Shown here: in pieces, positions 184-61,939 of the stretch | Numbering within the stretch: the first letter of the stretch is position 1 | How the letters are laid out: every line of letters begins with the position of its first letter | Virus record (IMG/VR): IMGVR_UViG_3300037010_001227 | Location: 62,001-126,000 of that record | DNA length: 64,000 bases | Strand: one strand, 5' to 3' | Translations under genes and position numbers: made by a program | Notes under the pieces: model-generated | The model's database searches: none | The model's input: the letters and a program-made list of their open reading frames with translations, nothing else | Told to the model about the DNA's origin: nothing

Positions 184-270
184 TGGCGCGTAGTGAGAGA
201 TTTGAACTCCCGGTAGACTTTCATCGACGGATTACAAAACCGTTCCAATTGACCACTATGGGAACTACGC
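184..270 (-). tRNA. tRNA with UGU (Thr) anticodon and long variable arm
   Basis: Acceptor GCGTAGT/ACTACGC, G73, encoded CCA; anticodon arm ACGGT-TTTGTAA-TCCGT; 15-nt V region with GAT-GAAA-GTC hairpin; T-arm GGGAG-TTCAAAT-CTCTC. Confidence 0.85.
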
Positions 271-320
271 AAGTAAAAATCGCTCCCTGCCTTTGTCAGG
301 GTTTGCGCTCATGTTTGCGC

Positions 321-623
321 TCATGTTTGGTCATTATCTTGTTTATCAAGATTGATACCAAAACGAGCTGCTATCAATTTAATTACATCTTTCAACATTG
401 TAATACTATAACCACCAAGTACTAAATAAAATAAATAATCATTTACTTGACTAATATAGGTTAAAGTGTCAAAAATCTTCCATGGATTTACTGCAATACA
501 CCAATTTAATGTAATAAATGCTATAAACGCGGCGGTACTTATTACTCTTCCATAAGATGCATCAGTATTAGTACTATATACTTTTTTCCACCAATGTAAC
601 ATAAAATACCTAAACCTTACCAA
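321..623 (-). CDS. small two-TM membrane protein (holin-like size and topology)
   Basis: Two hydrophobic segments and a charged C-terminus; start may be the ATG at 602. Confidence 0.55.
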   Translation of the reverse strand: MVRFRYFMLHWWKKVYSTNTDASYGRVISTAAFIAFITLNWCIAVNPWKIFDTLTYISQVNDYLFYLVLGGYSITMLKDVIKLIAARFGINLDKQDNDQT

Positions 624-721
624 AACTTATTTAGAACTCTTCGATATCGGTATATCTTCATGGAAAAGCTATAGGTGTTTCTTTAAAGATTTTTGGAATC
701 TTTTAAAGAAGACCCCACACC

Positions 722-1798
722 CTAATGAGAACTGAATTGTCTAACCCAAACTTTAATAGATTTTTTCACATAAAAACGTAGTTTAATCAAATTTAATAAC
801 TGAATAATTCTAAAGTTACGTAAAAACCAAACCCTGTTCATTACTTTAACAATATCTTTTGTAGACGTTGGATCAGCTTTTGCAAAATTACTTACCCAAG
901 AAACTTCTGGGGACACAACAATTGGTAATTCTGACATTACCATGTCCGCTGATACAATATTAAAAGTTTCAGTAAAAGATACTTGCATACCCATATCCAT
1001 ATCTTTTATAAATTCTAAAAAATCATCATGAGATAACCATTCATGTGTTACTAAATGATGACGATAGGAATTTTTAAATAATCCTCTAAGATTATTTAAA
1101 GCTGGTTCACTTTTATTTTCTATTCTGGTTCCATTAATATGGAAATAAAGAGTCAACTGGTTTTTATCTGCAAATTCTATAGCTGCTATAGCTTGTGTTA
1201 AGTGATTTTTCAAATGTCTAACAGCACCAAAACACATTATATGAATTTCATTCTCTCTATCTCTGAATCTTACATAAGGTTCATAAAATTCCATAGGATA
1301 ACAATTAGGCAGATATAAAACTTTTTTGTCTATTTTTGATTCATCCCAATAAGGGTGGGCAGATTTAACAATAGTTTTGATATCATGGTAACTGCGCTTT
1401 GAATTACCAGAAACAGAAACATTATCGTAACCTACGTATCGTGAAATCCAATCCATAGCCATACCTTCAGTTGCTAAGAAAGGCATTTCACTATGATTTC
1501 TAATAATCCACTGTACTTTAGGATGAAGTTTATGAAGAATCTCAAATTTTTCTGGGACTACCCAAAAGGCTTCTATAACTACATGAGTAGGTTTATACTC
1601 TGTCACTAGTCTATCAATACAATTATTATCAATAGCATGAACAACTTTTACAGAAAAACCTTTTTTTCTCAAAGCATCTGCAACAAAGTTAGCACTATTT
1701 ACTAACCCAGATGACAATCCAGTTCTACAACTATATGTAGAGTTACCATAAGAGTCTTCTCTAAATTTTAAAATAAATAAAATTTTTGCCATTTCCAT
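722..1798 (-). CDS. GT-B fold glycosyltransferase (GT4-like)
   Basis: C-terminal SFTETFNIVSADMV nucleotide-sugar motif, FGAVRHLKNH strand, two-domain 358-aa size. Confidence 0.75.
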   Translation of the reverse strand: MEMAKILFILKFREDSYGNSTYSCRTGLSSGLVNSANFVADALRKKGFSVKVVHAIDNNCIDRLVTEYKPTHVVIEAFWVVPEKFEILHKLHPKVQWIIRNHSEMPFLATEGMAMDWISRYVGYDNVSVSGNSKRSYHDIKTIVKSAHPYWDESKIDKKVLYLPNCYPMEFYEPYVRFRDRENEIHIMCFGAVRHLKNHLTQAIAAIEFADKNQLTLYFHINGTRIENKSEPALNNLRGLFKNSYRHHLVTHEWLSHDDFLEFIKDMDMGMQVSFTETFNIVSADMVMSELPIVVSPEVSWVSNFAKADPTSTKDIVKVMNRVWFLRNFRIIQLLNLIKLRFYVKKSIKVWVRQFSSH

Positions 1799-1817
1799 TT
1801 CAGCCTCATATTAATGC

Positions 1818-1894
1818 TGTAGCGGGTTAAGAAATTTGAATTCTTATCGTAAGTTTGGTAGACTTTCATGCTAACTGTTGAACATCACACTCGC
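1818..1894 (-). tRNA. degenerate tRNA-Gly(ACC), possibly a pseudogene
   Basis: AAGT-CTACCAA-ACTT anticodon arm, T-arm AAGAA-TTCAAAT-TTCTT, U73; two acceptor mismatches and ACA instead of CCA. Confidence 0.6.
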
Positions 1895-1900
1895 ATAAAC

Positions 1901-2125
1901 TTAAACTTCCTTTAAAAACTCTCTTACTTCATCAGCATAACTTCTAACAATTTTTTGAATGATTAATGTTTGACCTTCATGAGAACAGCTATTAAAGAAA
2001 TGTTTAAACTCTTCTAATTCCTGATCCATACTTTTGGGAACTGCATAAATAGTTTTACCAAATTTATCAGTTGTTTTTACTGTGTCAATATAATCATTAG
2101 GATGGGTATAATCTTCAGTAGTCAT
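1901..2125 (-). CDS. hypothetical protein (MTTEDYTHP...)
   Basis: ORF track; start moved to 2125 because the 5' extension overlaps tRNA-Ser. Confidence 0.6.
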   Translation of the reverse strand: MTTEDYTHPNDYIDTVKTTDKFGKTIYAVPKSMDQELEEFKHFFNSCSHEGQTLIIQKIVRSYADEVREFLKEV

Positions 2126-2146
2126 AAAAGTCTCTAAAACTAATTC

Positions 2147-2236
2147 AGGCGGAAAACAAGAGGATCGAACTCTCATGCCCTTTCAGGTATCTTGTTTAGT
2201 AAACAAGTGCAACAAACCAGTATTTGCCTGTTTTCC
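2147..2236 (-). tRNA. tRNA-Ser(ACT), class II
   Basis: GGAAAAC/GTTTTCC acceptor, G73, CTTGT-TTACTAA-ACAAG anticodon arm, long V-arm, TTCGATC loop; ends CCT. Confidence 0.85.
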
Positions 2237-2241
2237 ATAAA

Positions 2242-2422
2242 TGACGGGCCGTTTAATCCCGTCTCTCCTTGTCGGTCATGACTCCGACTCATCTTGTAAT
2301 TTCAAGAATGCTTAATCTATGTAAGAACGTATAACACAAATCAATTATCTAGTTAGCTAGCATTTTCAATAATTGAAAACGAACTTGATTACAGCGGTTC
2401 AAACAGGAAGATCGAGGAAACC
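2242..2422 (-). ncRNA. candidate structured ncRNA, rod-like, about 180 nt
   Basis: Nested long-range complementarity (2384-2393 with 2295-2306; 2359-2364 with 2307-2312; partial end-to-end pairing) plus local hairpins; no ORF. Confidence 0.35.
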
Positions 2423-2432
2423 TATAATTTAA

Positions 2433-3029
2433 TTATAGTAGTTTCAGCCCTTTTATACGAAAAATGTCACCAAAGTTGTTCATCAGAGCTAAAGCAGTTA
2501 CTCGGTTATCTAAATCAGGTTCACTCCATTCTGTATAAAAATCAAACCTACAACTATCATAGCGTTGAAGAATCTGTTTAAGACTCTGAGAACCTTCCGG
2601 TGTTAATAATATAATCGTACCATTAGTCCAAGGCGCTAATGGATGCTCTTTCTGAAATTGAGCAACAGCATGAGCTGACTGAACTGCTTTCTGTGACTCA
2701 GATAAAGTCTCATCACAAATAATATAAAGCTTCTTTGCACCTGGATTGTTAAAATACTCTTTCCAAGTATCAATACGCTCACGTAATTTATCACTCAAAT
2801 CACGTAATCTATGTTCATATGCCTTACTGGCATTTTTTGATATAACTTCAATTGGACCTTTGTGAGTCCTATACTTGCTACGTAATTCTGACATAGCTAT
2901 ATGAAGTGCTCTATACTGAACCGTATTAGTTCCAGCGTAGGTTTTAAGTAACAGTTTAGCCTTTTTCCAAGCTTCTTTTTGTTCAGCAGTGAAATTAGGA
3001 CGAGTTTTAATAGTAGTTTCGATAGCCAT
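2433..3029 (-). CDS. PTH2-like peptidyl-tRNA hydrolase domain protein with N-terminal extension
   Basis: C-terminal QKAVQSAHAVAQF...WSEPDLDNRVTALAL pattern of phage PTH2-like proteins; SD AAGGAG before the ATG at 3029. Confidence 0.7.
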   Translation of the reverse strand: MAIETTIKTRPNFTAEQKEAWKKAKLLLKTYAGTNTVQYRALHIAMSELRSKYRTHKGPIEVISKNASKAYEHRLRDLSDKLRERIDTWKEYFNNPGAKKLYIICDETLSESQKAVQSAHAVAQFQKEHPLAPWTNGTIILLTPEGSQSLKQILQRYDSCRFDFYTEWSEPDLDNRVTALALMNNFGDIFRIKGLKLL

Positions 3030-3036
3030 TTGATGG

Positions 3037-3143
3037 TCTCCTTGAAAAATTGGCACTTTATAAAGGTGTAACTCTTCACAAGATCAAGGCGATCTACTTA
3101 CAACCTAAAGATGATTAAAGCTCATAAACATGATGTTACTCCT
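3037..3143 (-). promoter_or_regulatory. leader peptide MFMSFNHL* (3105-3131) with putative translational attenuator of the PTH2-like gene
   Basis: SD AGGAGT 6 nt before the uORF ATG; AGATC/GATCT hairpin competes with anti-SD TCGCCTTGA pairing to TCAAGGAGA (8 of 9 bp). Confidence 0.5.
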
Positions 3144-3155
3144 AATATATAATTC

Positions 3156-3229
3156 TGGTGTTTCTGACAGGAATTGAACCCGTATAAACTATTTTAGAGA
3201 TAGCTGCTCTACCGTTGAGCTACAGAAAC
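3156..3229 (-). tRNA. amber suppressor tRNA (CTA anticodon)
   Basis: GTTTCTG/CAGAAAC acceptor, A73, CCA; GCTAT-CTCTAAA-ATAGT anticodon arm; canonical D- and T-arms. Confidence 0.9.
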
Positions 3230-3319
3230 ATTTTATAGATGATAAAACCAGGGAGGTTAGCCTCGCCAATACCTGCGGTTTTATATTCCGCTATTCTATA
3301 TAGAAAGAGCTATATTAAT

Positions 3320-3410
3320 TGGCGGCAGGTGTCCGATTCGAACGGACGAAACGCTTTCACGTTTGGATGTTTTCAAGACATCTGGGTTGTAACCACTTCC
3401 CTAACCTGCC
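3320..3410 (-). tRNA. tRNA-Ser(TGA)
   Basis: GATGT-CTTGAAA-ACATC, long V-arm, G73, CCA. Confidence 0.95.
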
Positions 3411-3510
3411 TATAGTTCTTCTTTACCGTAATGTTGTAACACATGACAATTAGAACAAATCAATTGTAAGTTATCCAAATCATTTGTGCCAATGTTACAG
3501 GTTTCTACTA
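3411..3510 (-). pseudogene. C-terminal fragment of an HNH endonuclease
   Basis: Translates as GTNDLDNLQLICSNCHVLQHYGK; no intact 5' part. Confidence 0.6.
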
Positions 3511-3541
3511 TATAATAAACAACTAAGTTTTTAGTTGATTA

Positions 3542-3784
3542 TCATACTTCCTCAACTCTAAATTGATTTTTAGCTGGAACCCAACCACCGCGTTTATGCC
3601 TATATTCAATAAAATTATCAATCCAATCATGTGCCTCTAAAGAGGTTTCAAATTCCCAGTACTCCATAGTTGGAGGAATTGGATCAAATATTGGCATTCC
3701 CAACAAATCATATTGCCAACCTAAGACTTTAGGTAGATAACATTCGCCAAATGGTTGTCCTAAGTTAGTCCAAATTCTATACAT
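3542..3784 (-). CDS. hypothetical protein
   Basis: ORF track, co-oriented with the tRNA array. Confidence 0.65.
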   Translation of the reverse strand: MYRIWTNLGQPFGECYLPKVLGWQYDLLGMPIFDPIPPTMEYWEFETSLEAHDWIDNFIEYRHKRGGWVPAKNQFRVEEV

Positions 3785-3797
3785 ATAATCCTCAAAA

Positions 3798-3871
3798 TGG
3801 TTGGGAAGCTAGGAGTTGAACCTAGGCTAAGACTTTCAAAGAGTCCGGTGCTACCGTAACACTTCTTCCCA
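3798..3871 (-). tRNA. tRNA-Gln(TTG)
   Basis: T1-A72 acceptor TGGGAAG/CTTCCCA, GGACT-CTTTGAA-AGTCT, CCA. Confidence 0.9.
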
Positions 3872-3877
3872 ATAATA

Positions 3878-4171
3878 TTAATCTACTTGCTCATAAGTAG
3901 CTGTAAAGATATCTGGTTTACAAGGATAAATCTCACCAAAAGCACCTTTAATAATCCAATCATTCCAAGAAACCAAAAGATTACCTTCCAGCGTTCCAAT
4001 AGAAAGAGTTCCATCCCTAGTCCCAGCTTCTGTAGGAAATAAGGAACCTTCTGTTCCTCGTTCTAATTGCCAAGCTTGATTTAACCAAGAAGGCCAATCC
4101 GTATTACTTGCTCTACGTTCTTTAGTCATTTGAAATGCTTCAATGACCACTGGTTTCTTTCGAAATTTCAT
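3878..4171 (-). CDS. conserved phage protein (KFRKKPVVIEA...WIIKG..GE.YPCKPDIF family)
   Basis: Recognisable widespread phage family motif; SD GAGGA. Confidence 0.8.
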   Translation of the reverse strand: MKFRKKPVVIEAFQMTKERRASNTDWPSWLNQAWQLERGTEGSLFPTEAGTRDGTLSIGTLEGNLLVSWNDWIIKGAFGEIYPCKPDIFTATYEQVD

Positions 4172-4208
4172 ATCGTCCTCTACATTATATCGGACTGAAT
4201 AAAAATTT

Positions 4209-4721
4209 CTAAACCTCTTTCAACATCTGTGGGCCTTTTACGATTCCACGATCTTGGAAGAATGAAATATACTTTTTAGTTTCTTCTGGGGCATTTTTAA
4301 GACCTTTTCTGATAACATTTCCACGACCCCAATTATATGCTGCCAAAGCTTCAGAATAGTTTCCAAATGTATCAAGTAAAGATTTTAATGTTTTAGCTGC
4401 CCACTCTGCTGCTTCTAGTGGATTAAATGGATCTCCATTAAATCCACTAATATGTGCTGGCATAATCTGAAATAAACCCTTCGCCCCTCGCTGGGATTTA
4501 GCATGAGGATTTCCCTTTGACTCAATTTCAATCATATGCTTGAGAATACCTGGAGCTAATCCATATGCCTTCTCTAATGAATTCAATCCTAATTTAGCAT
4601 ACCAAACATCAGGTGATTCCTGCTGTTTGTGCGTAATTGCAGGAGGCATTGTTGTAGTTTGGTGAATCTGTTCTTGAATAATATATTGTGATTTAATAAA
4701 TTCTTCTAGTTTTAATGACAT
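4209..4721 (-). CDS. soluble lytic transglycosylase (SLT domain)
   Basis: IESKGNPHAKSQRGAKGLFQIMP and ALAAYNWG motifs. Confidence 0.9.
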   Translation of the reverse strand: MSLKLEEFIKSQYIIQEQIHQTTTMPPAITHKQQESPDVWYAKLGLNSLEKAYGLAPGILKHMIEIESKGNPHAKSQRGAKGLFQIMPAHISGFNGDPFNPLEAAEWAAKTLKSLLDTFGNYSEALAAYNWGRGNVIRKGLKNAPEETKKYISFFQDRGIVKGPQMLKEV

Positions 4722-4743
4722 ATAAATCTCTACTATTTAGTTC

Positions 4744-4830
4744 TGATGCGAGAATTGGGAGTGGAACCCACACATCACAAGGATATCACTTTCTAAGAAT
4801 GAAACGTCGAGCTAGGTCTGCCATTCTCGC
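4744..4830 (-). tRNA. tRNA-Leu(TAG) with aberrant T-loop
   Basis: GCGAGAA/TTCTCGC, A73, TCATT-CTTAGAA-AGTGA, V-arm; T-loop TTCCACT; no CCA. Confidence 0.75.
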
Positions 4831-4832
4831 AT

Positions 4833-4917
4833 GGGTGCTGATTACAGGAATCGAACCTGGTTACTTTCACGCCAGATTTACAGTCTGGTACCAAGTCCAG
4901 TAGAGAGCAGAATCAGC
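4833..4917 (-). tRNA. tRNA-Tyr(GTA)
   Basis: GCTGATT/AATCAGC, A73, CCAGA-CTGTAAA-TCTGG, V-arm, TTCGATT loop; weak D-stem. Confidence 0.85.
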
Positions 4918-4920
4918 AAA

Positions 4921-4948
4921 TAAAAAGGCCCTAAACTAATAGGGCCTA
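4921..4948 (-). terminator. intrinsic terminator immediately 5' of tRNA-Tyr
   Basis: AGGCCCT/AGGGCCT stem followed by a T run on the minus strand. Confidence 0.65.
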
Positions 4949-4968
4949 GTATAGGATATTTAGTTCGC

Positions 4969-5130
4969 TTAACTGATAGGAGTCTTGTCAATATAACCAG
5001 AAGTTTGTTGCCAAGAAATTTCCCGATTTAACTCTACTTGAGTAGGAGTCAGTGGAGTAAAAATATCAGCTGGAACTTCATATTGAAGTTTAAGGGGATC
5101 TTCTTTATCTAGTAGATAGGTTTGTGACAT
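4969..5130 (-). CDS. 53-aa hypothetical protein (MSQTYLLDKEDPLK...)
   Basis: Hand translation; SD GAGGT; below the ORF-track size cutoff. Confidence 0.6.
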   Translation of the reverse strand: MSQTYLLDKEDPLKLQYEVPADIFTPLTPTQVELNREISWQQTSGYIDKTPIS

Positions 5131-5202
5131 GGTTAGAATACCTCTATAATTTAGTTAAACTTAATTTACTTAATTATTCAAGTAAAATAAGATTTTATTT
5201 TT

Positions 5203-5280
5203 TGGTGGATCTTGTCGGTAACGATCCGACCTGTATTCTCCTTGCAAAAGAGACAACCACCCCGTGCAGTTCCAAGACCC
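5203..5280 (-). tRNA. tRNA-Ala(TGC)
   Basis: G3.U70 pair, TCTCT-TTTGCAA-GGAGA, A73, CCA; T-loop ATCGTTA. Confidence 0.9.
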
Positions 5281-5284
5281 AAAA

Positions 5285-5880
5285 TTATTTGTGTTTTATG
5301 TATCTACTACTGTCAGTAAGAAAATGTATCTCTTCATGACAGGTAGGCACAAAATTTGAAGATTTTCAATACTATTGTTTGTTCTGTCTTTATCTATACG
5401 ATAAACAATTAACAATTCCGGTAACTTATCATATCCGCAATTATTACAGTTATTTGTATTATTTCTTTTTCTATTTCTCTGTAACTATAATCTCCACTTT
5501 TAAAATCTATTCTAACTAATAAATTTCGTTCAGTTTGTTTAGCTAAATCACAACATTTATGAGAACAAAAATGTAGTCCAGATTTTTTAGAATCAAATAA
5601 TTTACTAATATAATAAGATTTTCCACATAATGAACAAACACAATTATGTGGCTTGTCTTATTTTGTAAACAGCTTATTATATAACAATATGTGCAAGATT
5701 TACAACAAAACTTAGCTCTCACTCTATTAAGTTATTTATTTTCAGCTTCAATATATCTTGCAATATAAACATTTTACAATAGTTTTTGATATATTGGCAG
5801 ATATCCTTTGTATTTATTTACAAAGAAGACAGACCATCCACTAAATAAAAGTTTACAGTCAAATACACAAACTTCTACAA
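5285..5880 (-). pseudogene. decayed HNH endonuclease with N-terminal Cys-rich repeats
   Basis: Fragments CSLCGKSY..FCSHKC, CNNCGYDK..LIVYRIDKDRTNNSIENLQILC(fs)PTCHEEIH, broken by stops and frameshifts. Confidence 0.75.
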
Positions 5881-5907
5881 AAGTCTACCAAGATTAACCT
5901 GGTTAAT

Positions 5908-5982
5908 TGGTCGGAGTAGGAGAGATCGAATCTCCGGCTTCCTGTATCCAAAACAGGCTGTCTACCACTGACTTACACTCCG
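5908..5982 (-). tRNA. tRNA-Pro(TGG)
   Basis: C1-G72, CCTGT-TTTGGAT-ACAGG, A73, CCA. Confidence 0.95.
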
Positions 5983-6043
5983 TATTTTAACATATTATCA
6001 CATATGTTGGGGAAGAACCTAACGCTTCAAATGTGAAGGTTAC

Positions 6044-6119
6044 AGGTTGCCCAAAGTAGGATTGAACTACTAACCTCACGATTATCGGTCGTGCGCTCTA
6101 CCAGTTGAGCTATTAGGCA
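6044..6119 (-). tRNA. tRNA-Ile(GAT) with C33
   Basis: CACGA-CCGATAA-TCGTG; TGCCTAA/TTGGGCA acceptor. Confidence 0.85.
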
Positions 6120-6122
6120 ATA

Positions 6123-6197
6123 TGGTGGGCTAGATTAGTATCGTCTAACCTCTCGGGATTTTCAGTCCACGCGCTAATACATCTCAGCTACTAACCC
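6123..6197 (-). tRNA. tRNA-Phe(GAA) with degenerate T-loop
   Basis: GGGTTAG/CTAGCCC, A73, CCA, CTGAAAA loop; weak anticodon stem; T-loop ACGATA. Confidence 0.75.
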
Positions 6198-6227
6198 ATA
6201 AAATAAACCATTATTTGATTTTCAAAC

Positions 6228-6406
6228 AACAAAAAACCCGCTTTTTTTTGGCGGGTTCTTGTGAAAGGAGCAAAGATGAAGCTTTATGAACAAGAACCCG
6301 CTCTAGTATGAATGGAGAAAATTGCTGGGCTAAATTGGGCATAAAAACTACGACCAACGTTGTCGTTAGTTGCAAGTAGTGATGTCTGTCCAACTTGAAA
6401 GTTCAT
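6228..6406 (-). promoter_or_regulatory. leader-peptide transcription attenuator upstream of tRNA-Phe/Ile/Pro
   Basis: 40-aa uORF 6284-6406; 12-bp antiterminator (6290-6301 with 6251-6262) mutually exclusive with terminator (6251-6257 with 6235-6241 plus U run). Confidence 0.65.
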
Positions 6407-6465
6407 ACAATTAATTCCTATTTGTATACTGGTGGATAGGAAGAAAACTTAAGATATTTATTTTT

Positions 6466-6540
6466 TGGTGCGCCCGGAGGATCTCGAAACCTCAACCCTT
6501 TCGTTAAAAGCGAAATGCTCTTCCTTTGAGCTACGGGCAC
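6466..6540 (-). tRNA. tRNA-Lys(TTT)
   Basis: TTTCG-CTTTTAA-CGAAA, A73, CCA; T53/T61 mismatch at the T-stem closing pair. Confidence 0.85.
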
Positions 6541-6544
6541 AGAA

Positions 6545-6770
6545 TAATGACAGAGATAACCTTGAAGTATTATGTCCAAACTGCCATTCATTAATAGATA
6601 CTTGAAGAGGTAAAACCAAGGAAATTCAAAACAAGGAAAATACCATACCATACCAGATGATACTTTAATTGAGGCACTAAAAGCAACTGAAACAGTAGGA
6701 CAAGTAGGTATTGTAGTAAGATTATCTCCCAAAGGTAATAACTATGTTAGAGCAAAGAGATACATGTAAA
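6545..6770 (+). pseudogene. HNH endonuclease fragments, antisense to the tRNA array
   Basis: DNLEVLCPNCHSLIDT*RGK, then (frameshifted) TLIEALKATETVGQVGIVVRLSPKGNNY. Confidence 0.6.
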
Positions 6771-6781
6771 CGTTACTAATT

Positions 6782-6864
6782 TGGCTGAGGATATTGGAAT
6801 CGAACCAATCAGGTCAAAGACGAAAGCTTAACAGGCTTTTGTACCACCACTGTACTAATCCTCA
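6782..6864 (-). tRNA. tRNA-Asn(GTT) with extended variable arm
   Basis: TGAGGAT/ATCCTCA, G73, CCA; AAAGC-CTGTTAA-GCTTT; 13-nt V region with GTC-TTT-GAC hairpin. Confidence 0.9.
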
Positions 6865-47635: not shown

Positions 47636-48060
47636 TATGACTAATACTTTAAGTGATATTTAACAGAAAATAAATACGCTTTCTACAAACGGTTGTTGGG
47701 TTTGGACTGGTTACAAAACTAATGGTGGGCTATGGTAGAATACAATGGTGAGTCTATATTATCTACAGAGTGATATATTCTATGGAGAATAGACCAATAT
47801 TTCCACTTTTAGATTTAGACTACTTGTGCAAAAACAGAGCTTGTTGTAATCTAGTTCATCTAGAACCAGTTACTTACTTGAAAATGTATTGCGAGGTAAT
47901 CCAGGGAAGCATAACTTAACTAAACCTGTTATCGGCAAGGACATGAATATTCAGATAGTAATATTGCTATAATTACGAGCAAGAACGGTGAGCCTGAACG
48001 TGTTTGTAAACAATGTAGATTGGAAAGTTATAAACGATACGAGCTATTACATCCAAACCG
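47635..48060 (+). pseudogene. decayed HNH endonuclease
   Basis: Fragments CWVWTG, GYG, LDYLCKNRACCNLVHLEPVT, ENVLRG, GHEY, RVCKQC across frameshifts. Confidence 0.75.
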
Positions 48061-58822: not shown

Positions 58823-59003
58823 CACCTGGAGTAATAGCCGGGACTCAGTAATGGGTTCCGGCTATTGCTTTGTCTATTTTTAGGATGTTTGTTATGTAAC
58901 ATACATCCTGGTTTTAATTCATTAGATACATTCGCATTCTTAAAATACATCCAGGTATCTATACAGTATTAGATACACCGAGGTATTTTAACAATGTGGT
59001 TTT

Positions 59004-59242
59004 ATTAACCCCGGAGAAAATGTCATTAATTAATCCGGATTTTATTAAATATAGTAATATATACACTTACGATTTTTCATCGTAAACCAATTTAAAATAA
59101 TTTTCATTAACCCCGGAGAAAATGTCATTAATTAATCCGGATTTTATTAAATATAGTAATATATACACTTACGATTTTTCATCGTAAAACAATCCGGAAT
59201 AATTTTAATACATCCCGGAAAAATGTCATTAATTAATCCGAA
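59004..59242. repeat. two identical 83-bp direct repeats plus a partial third copy
   Basis: 59004-59086 = 59106-59188; internal ccgga/tccgg and ttacgat/atcgtaa inverted repeats. Confidence 0.9.
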
Positions 59243-59351
59243 TATCTATTAATAGCCCGATGATATATGCAGCTGAAGTTATGGCTGATATGTTATCGGG
59301 CTATTTTTGTATTGGATTTAATACTTACAATCAGAAATACAATTAAGATTT

Positions 59352-59414
59352 TGGTATGGAAATTGGATGTAATAAATAAATAAATACAATTAAGATTTTG
59401 GTATGGAAATTGCT
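59352..59414 (+). promoter_or_regulatory. tandem sigma54-type motifs upstream of the small-gene cassette array
   Basis: TGGTAT-GGAAA-TTGGA (59352) and TGGTAT-GGAAA-TTGCT (59399) inside a duplicated segment. Confidence 0.55.
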
Positions 59415-59569
59415 CGTGTTCATCCGATAATAAACACTCTACAATTTACTAAACTTGCTCATGAGTTTAGTAACTGTGATTATCGCCCATAAGCCAGAAA
59501 TTGCTATTAGTGATTCAGTTAGGGCACTGAATAAATCACTAACAATATACATACCTATGGAGGTATCAT

Positions 59570-60265
59570 ATGTCACTTGAACAACCCATCGTAGAAAGAG
59601 TAAAGAAACTCTTGGCATTATCTAAATCTTCCAATCCTGCTGAAGCTGAATTGGCAATGATGAAAGCCAATGAACTGATTCAGAAGTGGAATATTAACAT
59701 TATCGAACACCTGGATGAAAAAACTAACAAATGGACATTCCAGGTTCATGATAACGATGGGAAGGATAGTATATTTTATGGTAATAGATTGCAGGAATGG
59801 GAACTATTTCTTATGATGAAATTAGCTACCTACTGTGATGGTAAAATTGTGCAGTACGGTTATTCAGATACAACGCGGTATTGTTTCGTTGGTCTGGAAA
59901 CTGATGCTCAATTGTGCAAGATGCTATTCTGGGATATTAATAATCGTATTCGTAGTATCTTTAACAAAATGAAGAAGGCAATGCAGCTAAAAGATCGAAA
60001 TGCTTTTAGTCTTGGTGTTGTTCTTTCTCTTTGTAATCGAATGATTGAAGCAAAAAAAGTAATGCTTCAAACCCAGATTACTGAACGTGGTCTTATTACT
60101 ATTGACCATAAGAATAATGAATTTGCTGAATACTATTCTAATCTATCTAAGGGTTTTGTTAATTCCAATCATCGATTCAATCAAGAACGAGATTGGGATT
60201 CGTTTAAGGTTGGTACGAAGGTTGGTAATGATATGGAAATGTCCGTTGTTAATCCTACTGTTTAG
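59570..60265 (+). CDS. DUF2786-domain protein
   Basis: ERVKKLLALSKSSNPAEAELAMMKANELIQKWNI signature; ...VGLETDA... Confidence 0.8.
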   Translation: MSLEQPIVERVKKLLALSKSSNPAEAELAMMKANELIQKWNINIIEHLDEKTNKWTFQVHDNDGKDSIFYGNRLQEWELFLMMKLATYCDGKIVQYGYSDTTRYCFVGLETDAQLCKMLFWDINNRIRSIFNKMKKAMQLKDRNAFSLGVVLSLCNRMIEAKKVMLQTQITERGLITIDHKNNEFAEYYSNLSKGFVNSNHRFNQERDWDSFKVGTKVGNDMEMSVVNPTV

Positions 60266-60346
60266 TATTCTAGTCAGCACATTGTATTAGAATGTGCTGA
60301 ATAGTTTACTAATCCCGGTAAACTATATATCCTATGGAGGTATATC

Positions 60347-60424
60347 GTGAGTATTGAGATTTTGTTGGACGGTGAATGGGTTCTGTTGGTTTCGGAATCT
60401 GAACAAGAGTCACACCAGGGTTAA
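60347..60424 (+). CDS. 25-aa peptide (VSIEILLDGEWVLLVSESEQESHQG)
   Basis: GTG start 6 nt after GGAGG. Confidence 0.5.
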   Translation: MSIEILLDGEWVLLVSESEQESHQG

Positions 60425-60523
60425 ATCTGAAGCTAGTATTCTGGCTAACACATTCAGTTTAAATACTTGATGTGTTAGATAGTTTACTAATCACGGTAAA
60501 CTACACGTCCTATGGAGGACACG

Positions 60524-60853
60524 ATGTCAGCAAACCAGCAGGATATGTTCTACAGTATTCTCAGCGGTAGTGGATTTCTTACCACTACCCAAGCTGAAGA
60601 ATTGGCTGAAAAATGTGCCAATTCTGTTCAGCATTTCACGGATGACCAGGACCCGTTTCCTGTTCTTTACGAGGATAGGAATGTGGTTATCTATACCAAT
60701 GGGTCCAACGAAATCTTCATTAAGGAGAAGAACACACTCTCCGAAATGAGGATGAATTTCGACAACGGGATTCAGTTCACGGCCCAGGGTCACTACGTGG
60801 AACCATACTCCACCAATGGTTTAATTGGTTGGAGGGTGAAGAAGCGGAAGTAG
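60524..60853 (+). CDS. hypothetical protein
   Basis: Start moved downstream of the GGAGG SD; GC3-rich codons. Confidence 0.75.
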   Translation: MSANQQDMFYSILSGSGFLTTTQAEELAEKCANSVQHFTDDQDPFPVLYEDRNVVIYTNGSNEIFIKEKNTLSEMRMNFDNGIQFTAQGHYVEPYSTNGLIGWRVKKRK

Positions 60854-60928
60854 TAGTTCAGTCAACACATCATCTCAACTATTAAGATGATGTGTTGAAT
60901 CAACTACTATCCTATGGAGGATACCATA

Positions 60929-61120
60929 ATGTTTCTCTTAATTACCACTGTCTTTACCAAGAAACGAGTTATTAAACTTGTTGATAAAGTTGGTGAAAGC
61001 GGTAAAGAAACAAGTAATACATTGAAAGCATTTGGCTTTAAAGGGCCGGATGTGCATTCACTATTTGAAGGATATCCAGTAGAAGTAAGTAATAAGACAT
61101 TTTCATTACAGAAACAGTAG
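60929..61120 (+). CDS. hypothetical protein
   Basis: Start moved downstream of the GGAGG SD. Confidence 0.7.
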   Translation: MFLLITTVFTKKRVIKLVDKVGESGKETSNTLKAFGFKGPDVHSLFEGYPVEVSNKTFSLQKQ

Positions 61121-61192
61121 TAGCTCAGTCAACACATCCTCTTAATATAGATGATGTGTTGAATCAACTACTATCCTATGGAGGATATAACA

Positions 61193-61324
61193 ATGAGAAT
61201 ACAATTCATATGTGGTTGTGGAGTTCGCAACTACAATCTTGGAGATTGGCTCTGCCATTTTAAACAAAGTGGATTTTTGCGTGGAATGAGACACCTGTTA
61301 AAAACAAAGATTCAATTCAAGTAA
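61193..61324 (+). CDS. 43-aa Cys/His-containing peptide (MRIQFICGCG...)
   Basis: Hand translation; GGAGG SD. Confidence 0.65.
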   Translation: MRIQFICGCGVRNYNLGDWLCHFKQSGFLRGMRHLLKTKIQFK

Positions 61325-61341
61325 TATCCTATGGAGGATAT

Positions 61342-61494
61342 ATGTTAACTCTTTATCTAATCAGAGATATATACGGAACGGTGTTAGCTGCATGGAAAAT
61401 GGCTCTAACTACAGAGTCTATTTCTCCGAGTAAAAGAATCAAGGCCGCCGACGATCAGCTGATTGAATATGCAAAACAAGAGTCATATCAGTAA
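61342..61494 (+). CDS. 50-aa peptide (MLTLYLIRDIYG...)
   Basis: Hand translation; GGAGG SD. Confidence 0.65.
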   Translation: MLTLYLIRDIYGTVLAAWKMALTTESISPSKRIKAADDQLIEYAKQESYQ

Positions 61495-61540
61495 GTTAGT
61501 CAATAATTGTAACTCAAAGTTCTATATGAAAGGATAAGTC

Positions 61541-61690
61541 ATGAGTTTAGCTGACATTTGTTCTCAATGCTCAGATAGTCTTACTTGTTTAACAGCATAT
61601 ATAAAACCATGTGCTGTTTTATCACAAAACAACGCATCTCTGGAGACGTGTGATGACAATACAACGAATGTTCAGGATTTGGAACGTTAA
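61541..61690 (+). CDS. 49-aa Cys-rich peptide (MSLADICSQC...)
   Basis: Hand translation; AAGGA SD. Confidence 0.55.
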   Translation: MSLADICSQCSDSLTCLTAYIKPCAVLSQNNASLETCDDNTTNVQDLER

Positions 61691-61853
61691 TACTATTAAG
61701 GTTCCAGTTCATAGATTTCATAGATAGTCTTTCATCCTGGATATTCTAAATATATCCAGGCTAAAGGACTATTAATCCTATGGAGGGTTAAATGTAGAAA
61801 GTAAAACTTCTTTGTTACAATAGATGTATCTGATTTTTGGTAGTATTATTAAT

Positions 61854-61939
61854 GGCCCTATGGTGAAATTGGTAGACACAAAGCACTCAAAATGCTTCGC
61901 TCACAAAGCGTTTCGGTTCGAATCCGAATAGGGCCACCA
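61854..61939 (+). tRNA. tRNA-Leu(CAA)
   Basis: GGCCCTA/TAGGGCC, AAGCA-CTCAAAA-TGCTT, V-arm, A73, CCA. Confidence 0.95.

What the first reader, a model, noticed from the sequence alone, without database searches (positions are those of the whole stretch)
59551..61790. Seven SD sequences locked in a covarying CCT-ATGG-AGG hairpin: a shared translational operator
Flanks change in compensatory fashion: ATACCT/AGGTAT, GTCCT/AGGAC, TATCCT/AGGATA, ATATCCT/AGGATAT, TAATCCT/AGGGTTA. The hairpin, not only the SD, is therefore under selection. It presents AUGG(A) at the loop, similar to but not matching the CsrA/RsmA ANGGA site. Inference: one RNA-binding protein (host Csr/Rsm or a phage factor) or temperature co-regulates translation of the whole array.
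Basis: partly seen in the sequence, partly recalled or inferred. Interest (0 to 1): 0.66.

Follow-up and report, generated by a model that had tools for sequence, protein, structure and literature searches.

The report
Repeated ribosome-site hairpin in phage genes
A large phage from microbial mats starts each of a run of tiny genes with the same ten-base ribosome-binding motif folded into a short hairpin, a real and selected RNA structure that most likely damps and standardises translation and also serves as a recombination point for gaining and losing genes, with no evidence yet for a dedicated regulator.

Summary
CCTATGGAGG occurs 7 times in the window, all on the + strand within 2.2 kb (0.04 expected). 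An 8th copy lies just past the window end. Each sits 4-8 nt before a start codon. CCU pairs with the AGG of the GGAGG ribosome-binding site (Shine-Dalgarno, SD), the loop is AUGG, and 2-5 further flanking pairs covary, also at an orthologous site in the only close relative found.

"Locked" overstates it. Predicted hairpin energies (-4.3 to -7.3 kcal/mol) are weaker than the predicted SD:anti-SD pairing (-9 to -13). One copy needs a bulge, and one precedes only ATG-TAG.

The hairpin is the last part of duplicated intergenic cassettes: a long hairpin right after the upstream stop codon, then the SD hairpin. They sit in a block of small genes of unknown function in a 213-kb phage that encodes its own RNase III. 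A variant contig lacks one gene precisely between two motif copies.

Best reading: a cis-acting, half-occluding initiation hairpin that spreads with the cassette. It combines two known themes, T4-style SD sequestration and T4-type PeSL (promoter-early stem-loop) cassettes.

No CsrA, S21, S1 or cold-shock gene was found in the phage. The CsrA loop register does not fit. Predicted melting lies above 55 C, which argues against a thermosensor. A trans-acting factor is neither supported nor excluded.

The parts
59551..59566 (+). SD hairpin copy 1 (ATACCT / AUGG loop / AGGTAT), 3 nt before the ATG of gene A
   Evidence: -6.2 kcal/mol with an outer stem that also pairs the AUG
59570..60265 (+). gene A, 231 aa, DUF2786 + DUF7168
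   Evidence: orthologues at 64%, 48% and 47% identity
60262..60325 (+). intergenic cassette a: a long hairpin that holds the stop codon of gene A (CAGCACAT...ATGTGCTG core), then a second 8-bp hairpin at 60302-60325
   Evidence: (z -4.0)
60325..60345 (+). SD hairpin copy 2; pairs only with a 1-nt bulge
60347..60424 (+). gene B, 25 aa, GTG start
   Evidence: a variant strain in run X4 has 60347 G>A, which makes the start ATG
60446..60503 (+). intergenic cassette b, a paralogue of cassette a (86% over 49 nt): CTAACACAT...ATGTGTTAG hairpin plus a second hairpin at 60480-60503
   Evidence: (z -3.9)
60507..60520 (+). SD hairpin copy 3 (GTCCT / AGGAC)
60524..60853 (+). gene C, 109 aa; automatic gene calls start it at the in-frame loop ATG at 60512
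   Evidence: 44% identical homologue in L035
60851..60909 (+). intergenic cassette c: a hairpin of about 22 bp with a 3x3 internal loop, whose 5' arm starts in the TAGTAG stop codons. It looks like an RNase III site.
   Evidence: (-35.6 kcal/mol, z -6.6)
60908..60923 (+). SD hairpin copy 4 (TATCCT / AGGATA); it competes with an alternative UAUGG/CCAUA hairpin
60929..61120 (+). gene D, 63 aa
   Evidence: 44% tblastx match in L038
61117..61174 (+). intergenic cassette d, a paralogue of cassette c (94% over 47 nt)
   Evidence: (z -3.7)
61172..61187 (+). SD hairpin copy 5 (TATCCT / AGGATA)
61193..61324 (+). gene E, 43 aa; absent from a variant contig that joins copy 5 to copy 6
   Evidence: (joint 61171>61325, 18 nt shared)
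61324..61341 (+). SD hairpin copy 6 (ATATCCT / AGGATAT). It begins at the last base of the TAA stop of gene E and ends at the base before the ATG of gene F.
61342..61494 (+). gene F, 50 aa
61723..61773 (+). long two-tier hairpin directly upstream of copy 7
   Evidence: z -3.7
61772..61791 (+). SD hairpin copy 7 (TTAATCCT / AGGGTTAA, 8 bp with one G-U). This is an orphan site followed by ATG-TAG at 61792-61797.
61854..61939 (+). tRNA-Leu(CAA) downstream of the orphan copy

Best explanation
The element is a standard translation-initiation cassette, specific to this phage lineage. It serves a run of tiny early-type genes on what is probably one polycistronic mRNA. In each cassette an upstream CCU acts as a built-in anti-SD. 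It pairs with the AGG of a strong GGAGG SD. Another 2-5 pairs extend into the SD-to-AUG spacer, leaving AUGG, including the first two G of the SD, as a tetraloop.

The 30S subunit must melt this 5-8 bp helix to initiate. Predicted SD:anti-SD pairing is stronger than the helix, so the hairpin damps and equalises initiation rather than blocking it. It probably also keeps the SD out of long-range pairings with the heavily structured intergenic RNA.

The cassette (post-stop long hairpin plus SD hairpin) has spread by duplication. Its identical 10-18 nt core acts as a recombination point where genes are lost or gained. No dedicated trans-acting factor is required.

Shown: the repeat, its position at gene starts, the covariation, the duplicated cassettes, the deletion joint and the phage RNase III gene. 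Inferred: that the genes are early, that they share one transcript, and the damping or insulating effect on translation.
For: - Seven (eight in the genome) exact copies, all sense-strand, 4-8 nt before start codons.
- Covarying stem with G-U pairs; flank complementarity above chance.
- Orthologous compensated site in L035, which carries 4 more exact copies plus degenerate variants of the type YCU(N)UGGAGG.
- Hairpin energies of -4.3 to -7.3 kcal/mol against SD:anti-SD duplexes of -9.3 to -13.1.
- The stem ends 0-5 nt before the AUG, inside the 30S footprint.
- GGAGG SDs are rare in the genome (35) and 18 lie in this block, while other genes mostly use weaker AGGA-type sites.
- The intergenic cassettes are pairwise paralogous.
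- A variant contig deletes exactly the 153 nt between the 18-nt repeats of copies 5 and 6.
- No RNA-binding regulator gene was found.
- SD sequestration in phage initiation regions has precedent in T4 genes e, soc, 49 and I-TevI (PMC3014915). Cassette-mediated shuffling has precedent in PeSLs (PMC2839356).
Against: - There are no expression, structure-probing or translation data, and no RNA run holds this sequence.
- In full intergenic context the minimum-energy fold sometimes replaces the local hairpin with alternatives, at copies 1, 4 and 7.
- The exact invariance of the loop AU and of CCU in 12 copies across two phages that differ by 36% in the neighbouring protein exceeds what a plain hairpin needs. 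It could reflect sequence-specific recognition by a protein or nuclease.
- Covariation rests on few independent, TA-rich sequences.
- The deletion joint rests on one contig at depth 2.9.
Confidence: 0.45

Rival explanations
1. Shared translational operator. A host or phage RNA-binding protein, such as CsrA/RsmA or an unknown factor, recognises the invariant CCUAUGGAGG hairpin and switches the whole array on or off together.
For: The loop and core are invariant in 12 copies while the flanks drift, which suits sequence-plus-shape recognition. AUGGA fits ANGGA, and 5 of the 8 own copies carry tandem GGAGGA. The first array gene, conserved in both phages, carries the motif itself, so autoregulation is conceivable.
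Against: No csrA, S1, S21 or cold-shock gene is in the 95%-complete phage record. The CsrA rules are not met (GGA unpaired in a mostly 6-nt loop, stems of 4 bp or fewer, two spaced sites): here the A is paired, the loop is 4 nt, stems are 5-8 bp and there is no consistent second GGA. The DUF2786/DUF7168 model (pLDDT 80) matches no RNA-binding fold. The host is unknown.
Confidence: 0.18
2. RNA processing and stability module. The long post-stop hairpins are cut by the phage's own or the host's RNase III, as in the T7 early transcript. The SD hairpin plus strong SD then forms the protected 5' end of each monocistronic mRNA. Alternatively, the GGAG in the motif is itself the target of a RegB-like nuclease that shuts early genes off.
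For: The phage encodes a complete RNase III with a dsRNA-binding domain. Four of the intergenic regions in the window carry hairpins of about 20 bp with internal loops, z -3.7 to -6.6, that abut the SD hairpin. T7 processing is a precedent (PMC3867540), as are 5' roadblocks against RNase J1 (PMC3997798). Copies w5, r1 and r2 match 10 of 11 positions of the T4 RegB consensus GGAGRAYARAA.
Against: Copies 6 and 8 have no long hairpin upstream, so the SD hairpin exists without a processing site. After a cut in the 3' arm the SD hairpin would sit about 10 nt from the new 5' end, which is not ideal for protection. No RegB family match was found, although that control was silent. RegB prefers an unpaired GGA, and here the A is paired. 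There are no 5'-end data.
Confidence: 0.17
3. RNA thermometer. The hairpins melt with temperature in the mat environment and release the SDs of all array genes together.
For: The SD is partly paired in a short helix, and microbial mats see temperature swings (for habitat only).
Against: The core pair probability stays at or above 0.9 from 10 to 55 C for 10 of 12 copies folded in isolation. The stems are canonical, with three G-C/A-U core pairs and few mismatches, unlike fourU or ROSE elements. This is a prediction only.
Confidence: 0.05
4. No RNA-level function beyond the SD. The palindromic flanks are by-products of TA-rich sequence and of recent duplication or gene conversion of the cassette, or the repeat is kept only as a DNA recombination site.
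For: Copies 4 and 5, and the cassettes of copies 2 and 3, are clear duplicates. Flanks are TA-rich, so permutation among sites still gives a mean of 12 extra pairs against 22 observed. Copy 2 does not pair cleanly. There is a recombination joint at the repeat.
Against: Pairing exceeds the permuted and slid controls. Non-TA compensations occur: GT/AC, TT/AA, and TAAT/GTTA with G-U. The orthologous site in L035 changed on both arms and still pairs. Strict strand and position bias is seen at start codons.
Confidence: 0.12

Closest known systems
SD-sequestering hairpins in phage T4 initiation regions (genes e, soc, 49, I-TevI; PMC3014915)
   Same: A local helix in a phage mRNA pairs the SD and/or the AUG. 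The expected effect is reduced 30S binding.
   Different: In T4 each is a single-gene device that is relieved when a late promoter inside the helix yields a shorter transcript. Here one identical motif is repeated before 8 genes. No internal promoter is evident, only half of the SD is paired, and the helix is weak.
PeSL mobile regulatory cassettes of T4-type phages (PMC2839356, PMC4122927)
   Same: Repeated intergenic cassettes run from the upstream stop codon through a stem-loop to the SD and start of a small gene of unknown function in a plastic region. Recombination between copies deletes or swaps genes.
   Different: PeSLs are defined by a strong sigma-70 promoter plus a terminator stem-loop. 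Here no promoter-like hexamers are found, the stem-loops lack T-runs, and the conserved core is the SD hairpin itself.
CsrA/RsmA binding hairpins (GGA in loop; PMC7652899)
   Same: A short hairpin overlaps an SD, with AUGGA fitting ANGGA.
   Different: The loop is 4 nt rather than 6. The A of GGA is paired. The stems are longer and more stable. There is no consistent second site, no csrA in the phage, and the host is unknown.
RNase III processing signals of the T7 early polycistronic mRNA (PMC3867540)
   Same: Irregular hairpins of about 20 bp lie between small early genes, and an RNase III gene is at hand, here in the phage itself.
   Different: This applies to the neighbouring long hairpins, not to the 6-bp SD hairpin. 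Cleavage is untested.
T4 RegB endoribonuclease sites (GG*AGRAYARAA in early SDs; PMC3014915)
   Same: GGAG lies within the SD of early-type genes, with an A/U-rich 3' side. Three copies match 10 of 11 positions.
   Different: No RegB homologue was detected (control silent). The A of GGA is paired here, whereas RegB prefers an unpaired GGA.

Membership tests
SD-sequestering cis hairpin (translational attenuator) | SD and/or start codon base-paired in a local helix inside the 30S footprint | tested here: met
   The AGG of GGAGG plus 2-5 spacer nt are paired and the stem ends 0-5 nt before the AUG. Only 3 of the 5 SD bases are paired.
SD-sequestering cis hairpin (translational attenuator) | Pairing kept by compensatory change | tested here: met
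   Covariation 0.254 against 0.105 for shuffles (0 of 500) and at most 0.125 for slid controls. The three pairs next to the invariant core each show double changes and hold in 8-11 of 12 copies; the two outermost positions tested pair in only 3-6 of 12. Orthologous compensation is seen in L035.
SD-sequestering cis hairpin (translational attenuator) | Helix lowers translation initiation | not testable with these tools
   Energies only: hairpin -4.3 to -7.3, SD:anti-SD -9.3 to -13.1 kcal/mol.
T4-type temporal SD sequestration | Alternative promoter inside the 5' arm that frees the SD on a shorter transcript | tested here: not met
   No promoter-like site at or in the motifs in the sigma-70 consensus scan. 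Phage-specific promoters are not covered by that scan.
CsrA/RsmA binding site | GGA unpaired in the loop of a short (4 bp or less), mostly 6-nt-loop hairpin | tested here: not met
   The loop is AUGG (4 nt), the A of GGA pairs with the U of CCU, and stems are 5-8 bp.
CsrA/RsmA binding site | Two or more spaced GGA sites per target | tested here: not met
   Only the overlapping GGAGGA occurs, in 5 of 8 own copies. No second GGA sits at a consistent distance.
CsrA/RsmA binding site | CsrA present in the phage or host | tested here: inconclusive
   None in the phage record (control rang). The host was not identified.
RNA thermometer (fourU/ROSE type) | Weak, mismatch-containing SD helix that melts in the physiological range | tested here: not met
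   Predicted core pair probability is at or above 0.9 up to 55 C in 10 of 12 copies. Prediction only.
PeSL mobile regulatory cassette | Strong sigma-70-like early promoter in the cassette | tested here: not met
   No hit at the cassettes. By eye, TTTACT or TTGAAT have no properly spaced -10 box.
PeSL mobile regulatory cassette | Stem-loop between the stop codon and the next SD, upstream of small unknown-function genes in a plastic region | tested here: met
   array proteins have no family hits apart from gene A.
PeSL mobile regulatory cassette | Recombination between copies creates indels | tested here: met
   The joint 61171>61325 across the 18-nt repeat removes gene E. It rests on a single contig at depth 2.9.
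RegB nuclease target | GGAG in an early SD with the 3' context RAYARAA and an unpaired GGA | tested here: inconclusive
   GGAG is present in all copies. Three copies match 10 of 11 positions, others fewer. The A is paired.
RegB nuclease target | regB gene in the phage | tested here: inconclusive
   No match, but the family rang in no control genome either.
RNase III processing signal (the neighbouring long hairpins) | Irregular helix of about 20 bp in a polycistronic mRNA, with an RNase III available | tested here: met
   Hairpins at 60262-60312, 60446-60477, 60851-60909 and 61117-61174. Phage RNase III with dsRBD. Cleavage itself is not testable here.

The most novel reading that the evidence does not exclude
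The invariant CCUAUGGAGG hairpin is the recognition site of a still unidentified phage or host factor. This could be an RNA-binding repressor or activator, or a GGAG-specific endoribonuclease analogous to T4 RegB. It would switch a whole early gene set off or on together. That would amount to a new post-transcriptional regulon in an uncultivated jumbo phage, with the site built into a mobile gene-boundary cassette.
Probability: 0.18. Interest if true: 0.65.

Novelty: new variant of a known kind. Interest (0 to 1): 0.4.

Why it matters
If the reading is right, this phage lineage has merged two known ideas into one portable unit. One is SD occlusion to tune translation. The other is repeated gene-boundary cassettes that drive modular gene exchange. 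Every small gene that enters the array would then receive the same pre-tuned start signal.

That would be a natural counterpart of the standardised, insulated ribosome-binding parts used in synthetic biology. It would also help explain how plastic early regions of large phages stay expressible while genes come and go.

In practice, the motif misleads gene callers, which take the loop ATG as the start of two or three of these genes.

The element is lineage-specific and its effect is untested. Its importance is therefore moderate unless a dedicated trans-acting factor is found.

Tried and rejected
- **Close relatives for more covariation.**
  - megablast of the array against GenBank phages found no match.
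  - tblastn of the DUF2786 protein against phages found none.
  - The search for related loci with single proteins found none.
  - Profile scans of viral and metagenome contigs returned only homologues at 34% identity or less over full length, none with the motif.
  - The gene C search returned only an identical-sequence strain.
  - Identical-protein contigs L033, L034 and L086 are 100% identical in the array.
- **The 16-mer in viral contigs.** A scan for TATCCTATGGAGGATA gave 23 hits, about chance level, all single copies. Some lie in initiation regions of unrelated phages, and one is the tip of a terminator-like hairpin.
- **Diverged copies.** The covariance model found nothing convincing beyond the 12 training copies.
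- **Rfam.** Only tRNAs were found.
- **AUGG as a general loop motif.** It is not enriched outside the family.
- **SD occlusion across the block.** It is not a general property of the block. Mean energies are close to shuffles, and 34% of sites against 13% elsewhere have a hairpin of -4 kcal/mol or stronger that pairs the SD.
- **Expression evidence.** No RNA run holds the sequence.
- **Host identification.** The UvsX-like protein gave only hits below 31% identity, to phages of Firmicutes. The RNR scan of genomes found nothing.
- **DUF2786/DUF7168 as a candidate RNA-binding protein.** The model has pLDDT 80, with no Foldseek hit at E of 0.001 or better and only helical-hairpin matches at Z 6 or less.
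- **TAG recoding.** This was checked because of a tRNA with a CUA anticodon and the ATG-TAG after copy 7. There is no genome-wide signal.
- **Sigma-70 promoters inside the cassettes.** None were found.
- **Recurring 12-mers.** A search for 12-mers recurring elsewhere in the genome returned only chance-level noise.
Full report
**What is in the sequence**

The 10-mer CCTATGGAGG occurs exactly seven times in the 64-kb window, at 59554, 60331, 60509, 60911, 61175, 61328 and 61777. All copies are on the + strand. Shuffles predict 0.04 copies, and none of 100 reached 7.

The window is bases 62001-126000 of a 213,189-bp IMG/VR phage record with 34% GC and an estimated completeness of 95%. The whole record has only one further copy, 552 nt past the window end, also on the + strand.

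Every copy ends 4-8 nt before ATG or GTG. The six real downstream reading frames are small: 231, 25, 109, 63, 43 and 50 aa. The seventh copy precedes only ATG-TAG (61792-61797), 56 nt before a tRNA-Leu gene. The eighth precedes a 76-aa frame.

**The hairpin**

CCU pairs with the AGG of the GGAGG ribosome-binding site (SD). The loop is AUGG, so the first two G of the SD are unpaired. The last extends to 8 bp and includes one G-U pair. The eighth copy adds TTCCT/AGGAA.

Copy 2 (60331) is the exception. It has a T-T clash next to the core and pairs only with a one-base bulge. Local folds give -4.3 to -7.3 kcal/mol.

**Is the pairing more than chance?**

- Seven of 8 copies have at least two extra contiguous pairs. 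For random genome positions the chance of that is 0.16, so P is about 2e-5.
- The harsher test permutes the right flanks among the sites and so keeps their TA-richness. It gives 22 extra pairs observed against 12.1 expected, P about 0.007.
- On an alignment of 12 copies (8 own plus 4 from a relative), the covariation score is 0.254. Shuffles average 0.105 and none of 500 reach the observed value. Slid controls reach at most 0.125.
- The three pairs outside the invariant core show UA/UG/AU, AU/UA/GC and UA/AU.

G-U pairs and the strict strand bias point to + strand RNA. They argue against a DNA palindrome read by a dimeric protein, which would favour conserved half-sites rather than compensated ones.

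**Relatives**

The lineage is poorly sampled. There was no DNA match in GenBank phages. Single-protein scans also found nothing.

The first array gene encodes a DUF2786/DUF7168 protein. A word search found three homologues at 64%, 48% and 47% identity.

The 64% relative, L035 (5.7 kb), is again a run of small + strand genes. It carries four exact copies of the 10-mer. It also carries degenerate versions such as CCTTGGAGG, TCTGTGGAGG and CCTGGAGG.

At the orthologous site before the DUF2786 gene, the window reads ATACCT...AGGTAT and L035 reads TATCCT...AGGATA. The two arms differ at all three positions and still pair.

The 48% relative has CCTAT and GGAGG separated by five extra loop bases. The 47% relative instead shows AGGAG in the loop of a different 4-bp hairpin. 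The exact motif is therefore confined to the closest pair of phages.

A covariance model built from the 12 copies found no further convincing copy in the window, the next 11.5 kb of the genome, or the relatives.

The 16-mer with TAT/ATA flanks occurs at about chance frequency in IMG/VR, always as a single copy. In a few unrelated phages it lies in an initiation region, and once it forms the tip of a 13-bp terminator-like hairpin. The design can therefore arise elsewhere, but the array is particular to this lineage.

**Context**

GGAGG followed by a start codon is rare in this genome. There are 35 cases, and 18 of them lie on the + strand between genome positions 121.5 and 137 kb. This is a block of small genes of unknown function that begins with this array. 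Elsewhere the SD sites are weaker AGGA/AAGGAG types, or absent.

Downstream the block also holds a RadC-like JAB protein and a DPBB lytic transglycosylase. That these are early genes is an inference from this make-up.

The intergenic regions are themselves repeated cassettes. A long hairpin begins in or right after the upstream stop codon. Its core belongs to the family CA(A/G)CACAT...ATGTG(C/T)TG, with five copies in the window and one in L035. In two cassettes a second 8-bp hairpin follows, and then the SD hairpin.

Cassettes a and b are 86% identical over 49 nt. Cassettes c and d are 94% identical over 47 nt. The long hairpins are about 20 bp with internal loops. They fold well below shuffles (z -3.7 to -6.6) and are not followed by T-runs.

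The phage encodes a complete RNase III with a dsRNA-binding domain, at genome positions 141828-142493. This layout resembles the T7 early transcript, which RNase III cuts at five intergenic signals (PMC3867540). No sigma-70-like promoter lies in the cassettes, so I infer one transcript from upstream.

**Energetics**

- Predicted pairing of the motif with a 16S 3' tail is -9.3 kcal/mol for GGAGGA and -13.1 for GGAGGU. That is stronger than the hairpins.
- Folded alone, the core pair stays at least 0.9 probable from 10 to 55 C in 10 of 12 copies.
- In full intergenic context the minimum-energy fold keeps the local hairpin at copies 3, 6 and 8, and copy 5 keeps only the 3-bp core (5 bp in the centroid fold). 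At copies 1, 4 and 7 it is replaced by alternatives.

The SD is therefore half-occluded by a helix that the ribosome should be able to displace. "Locked" is too strong, and a thermometer is unlikely on these predictions.

**Search for a trans-acting factor**

- The phage record has no CsrA, S21, S1-domain or cold-shock gene. The controls rang for all four.
- The RegB family gave nothing, but its control was silent too.
- The array proteins and ten further block proteins have no RNA-binding domain.
- The DUF2786/DUF7168 protein folds with pLDDT 80 but matches no solved fold beyond helical hairpins.
- Against the CsrA rules summarised in PMC7652899, the motif fits ANGGA in letters. It fails on loop size, on pairing of the A, on stem length and on a second site.
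- Against the T4 RegB consensus GGAGRAYARAA (PMC3014915), three copies match 10 of 11 positions. RegB prefers an unpaired GGA, however.

**Recombination**

Contigs of four public metagenome runs (microbial mat and sediment) were laid on the array. One lower-identity strain shows a joint from 61171 to 61325 that skips 153 nt, with 18 nt fitting both sides.

The two sides are the identical 18-nt stretches of copies 5 and 6, at 61172-61189 and 61325-61342. The missing piece is exactly gene E plus one copy of the motif. This is the signature of recombination between motif copies, as described for PeSL cassettes in T4-type phages (PMC2839356). It rests on one contig at depth 2.9.

The same strain has G>A at 60347, which turns the GTG start of the 25-aa frame into ATG. 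This supports that tiny gene.

**Interpretation**

The best-supported reading is a cis-acting initiation cassette. A strong SD is half-buried in a short selected helix that damps and standardises initiation. The helix probably also shields the SD from the surrounding structured RNA. The cassette spreads with the gene-boundary repeats, which also mediate gene gain and loss (confidence 0.45).

Rivals:
- an operator for an unidentified protein (0.18);
- a processing or stability module tied to RNase III or to a RegB-like nuclease (0.17);
- no RNA function beyond the SD (0.12);
- a thermometer (0.05).

The strongest argument for a trans-acting factor is that CCU and the loop AU are invariant in 12 copies across two diverged phages. 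A plain hairpin would not need that. Gene conversion between cassettes is the alternative explanation.

**Novelty and score**

SD sequestration in phage mRNAs and repeated gene-boundary cassettes are both known. A promoter-less cassette whose conserved core is the SD hairpin itself, repeated before eight genes of a jumbo phage that carries its own RNase III, is a new variant. No paper in the library mentions the motif in this sense. Interest is moderate (0.4). It would be about 0.65 if a dedicated factor were found.

Noticed in passing
window 59000-59310: Three tandem repeats of about 102 bp (100/98/75% over 52 nt), each with CCGGA...TCCGG and ACGAT...ATCGT hairpins. They are followed by a terminator-like hairpin with a T-run at about 59245-59310, just upstream of the array. 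They could be a promoter cluster, iterons or a small RNA unit. On the minus strand they hold the best sigma-70-like hexamers of the region.
   Followed up: partly
window 59335-59412: Two identical 31-nt direct repeats 47 nt apart, immediately before a weak promoter-like site (TGGAAA-16-GATAAT at 59404-59431). This is a possible start of the array transcript.
   Followed up: no
G000 141828-142493 (outside the window; L084:129-794): The phage encodes a complete RNase III (catalytic domain plus dsRNA-binding motif, 221 aa).
   Followed up: partly
window 60278, 60449, 60866, 61133, 63273; L035 5315: A second repeated hairpin family, CA(A/G)CACAT...ATGTG(C/T)TG, with an A-T to G-C covarying pair. 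It always lies right after a stop codon and has no T-run. These are candidate RNase III or stability elements.
   Followed up: partly
window 61171-61325: A variant strain contig in a sediment metagenome run lacks the 153 nt between the two 18-nt motif repeats, which is gene E (one contig, depth 2.9). The same strain changes the GTG start at 60347 to ATG.
   Followed up: yes
window 61792-61797: An orphan SD hairpin is followed by a start-stop pair (ATG TAG), 56 nt before tRNA-Leu(CAA). It is either a remnant of a lost gene or a minimal ORF that loads ribosomes ahead of the tRNA.
   Followed up: partly
window 60512, 60914, 61178: The ATG inside the hairpin loop is in frame with genes C, D and E. 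Automatic gene calls on the source contig use it as the start for C and D (113 and 68 aa). The SD position argues for the downstream ATGs (109 and 63 aa).
   Followed up: yes
window 184-6864 (minus strand), especially 3156-3229: A cluster of ten tRNA genes includes one with a CUA anticodon (an amber suppressor type, labelled Pyl by ARAGORN) and a tRNA-Ser with anticodon ACT. No genome-wide TAG recoding signal was found.
   Followed up: partly
window 47680-48050: A gene-poor stretch after the DNA ligase gene contains a near-copy of the hairpin with C-G changed to U-A (TATTCT ATGG AGAATA at 47779-47794), but it is not before a start codon. The translated frames look like a decayed HNH-type gene. 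This was not checked.
   Followed up: no
G000 131346-132167 and 134292-134699 (outside the window; L085): The same small-gene block holds a RadC-like JAB domain protein and a DPBB lytic transglycosylase. Together with DUF2786 this resembles the early or leading-region gene sets of other mobile elements.
   Followed up: no
L017 and L028 (IMG/VR contigs of unrelated phages): The same 16-mer, TATCCTATGGAGGATA, forms the tip of a 13-bp GC-clamped terminator-like hairpin. In a family of roughly 110-kb phages (L009 and others) it is the initiation region of a 211-aa gene.
   Followed up: partly
G000 170211 and 161909 (outside the window): Two other genes have much stronger hairpins that bury the SD (-11.6 and -10.3 kcal/mol). 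The first pairs the SD and the AUG in a 14-bp stem.
   Followed up: no
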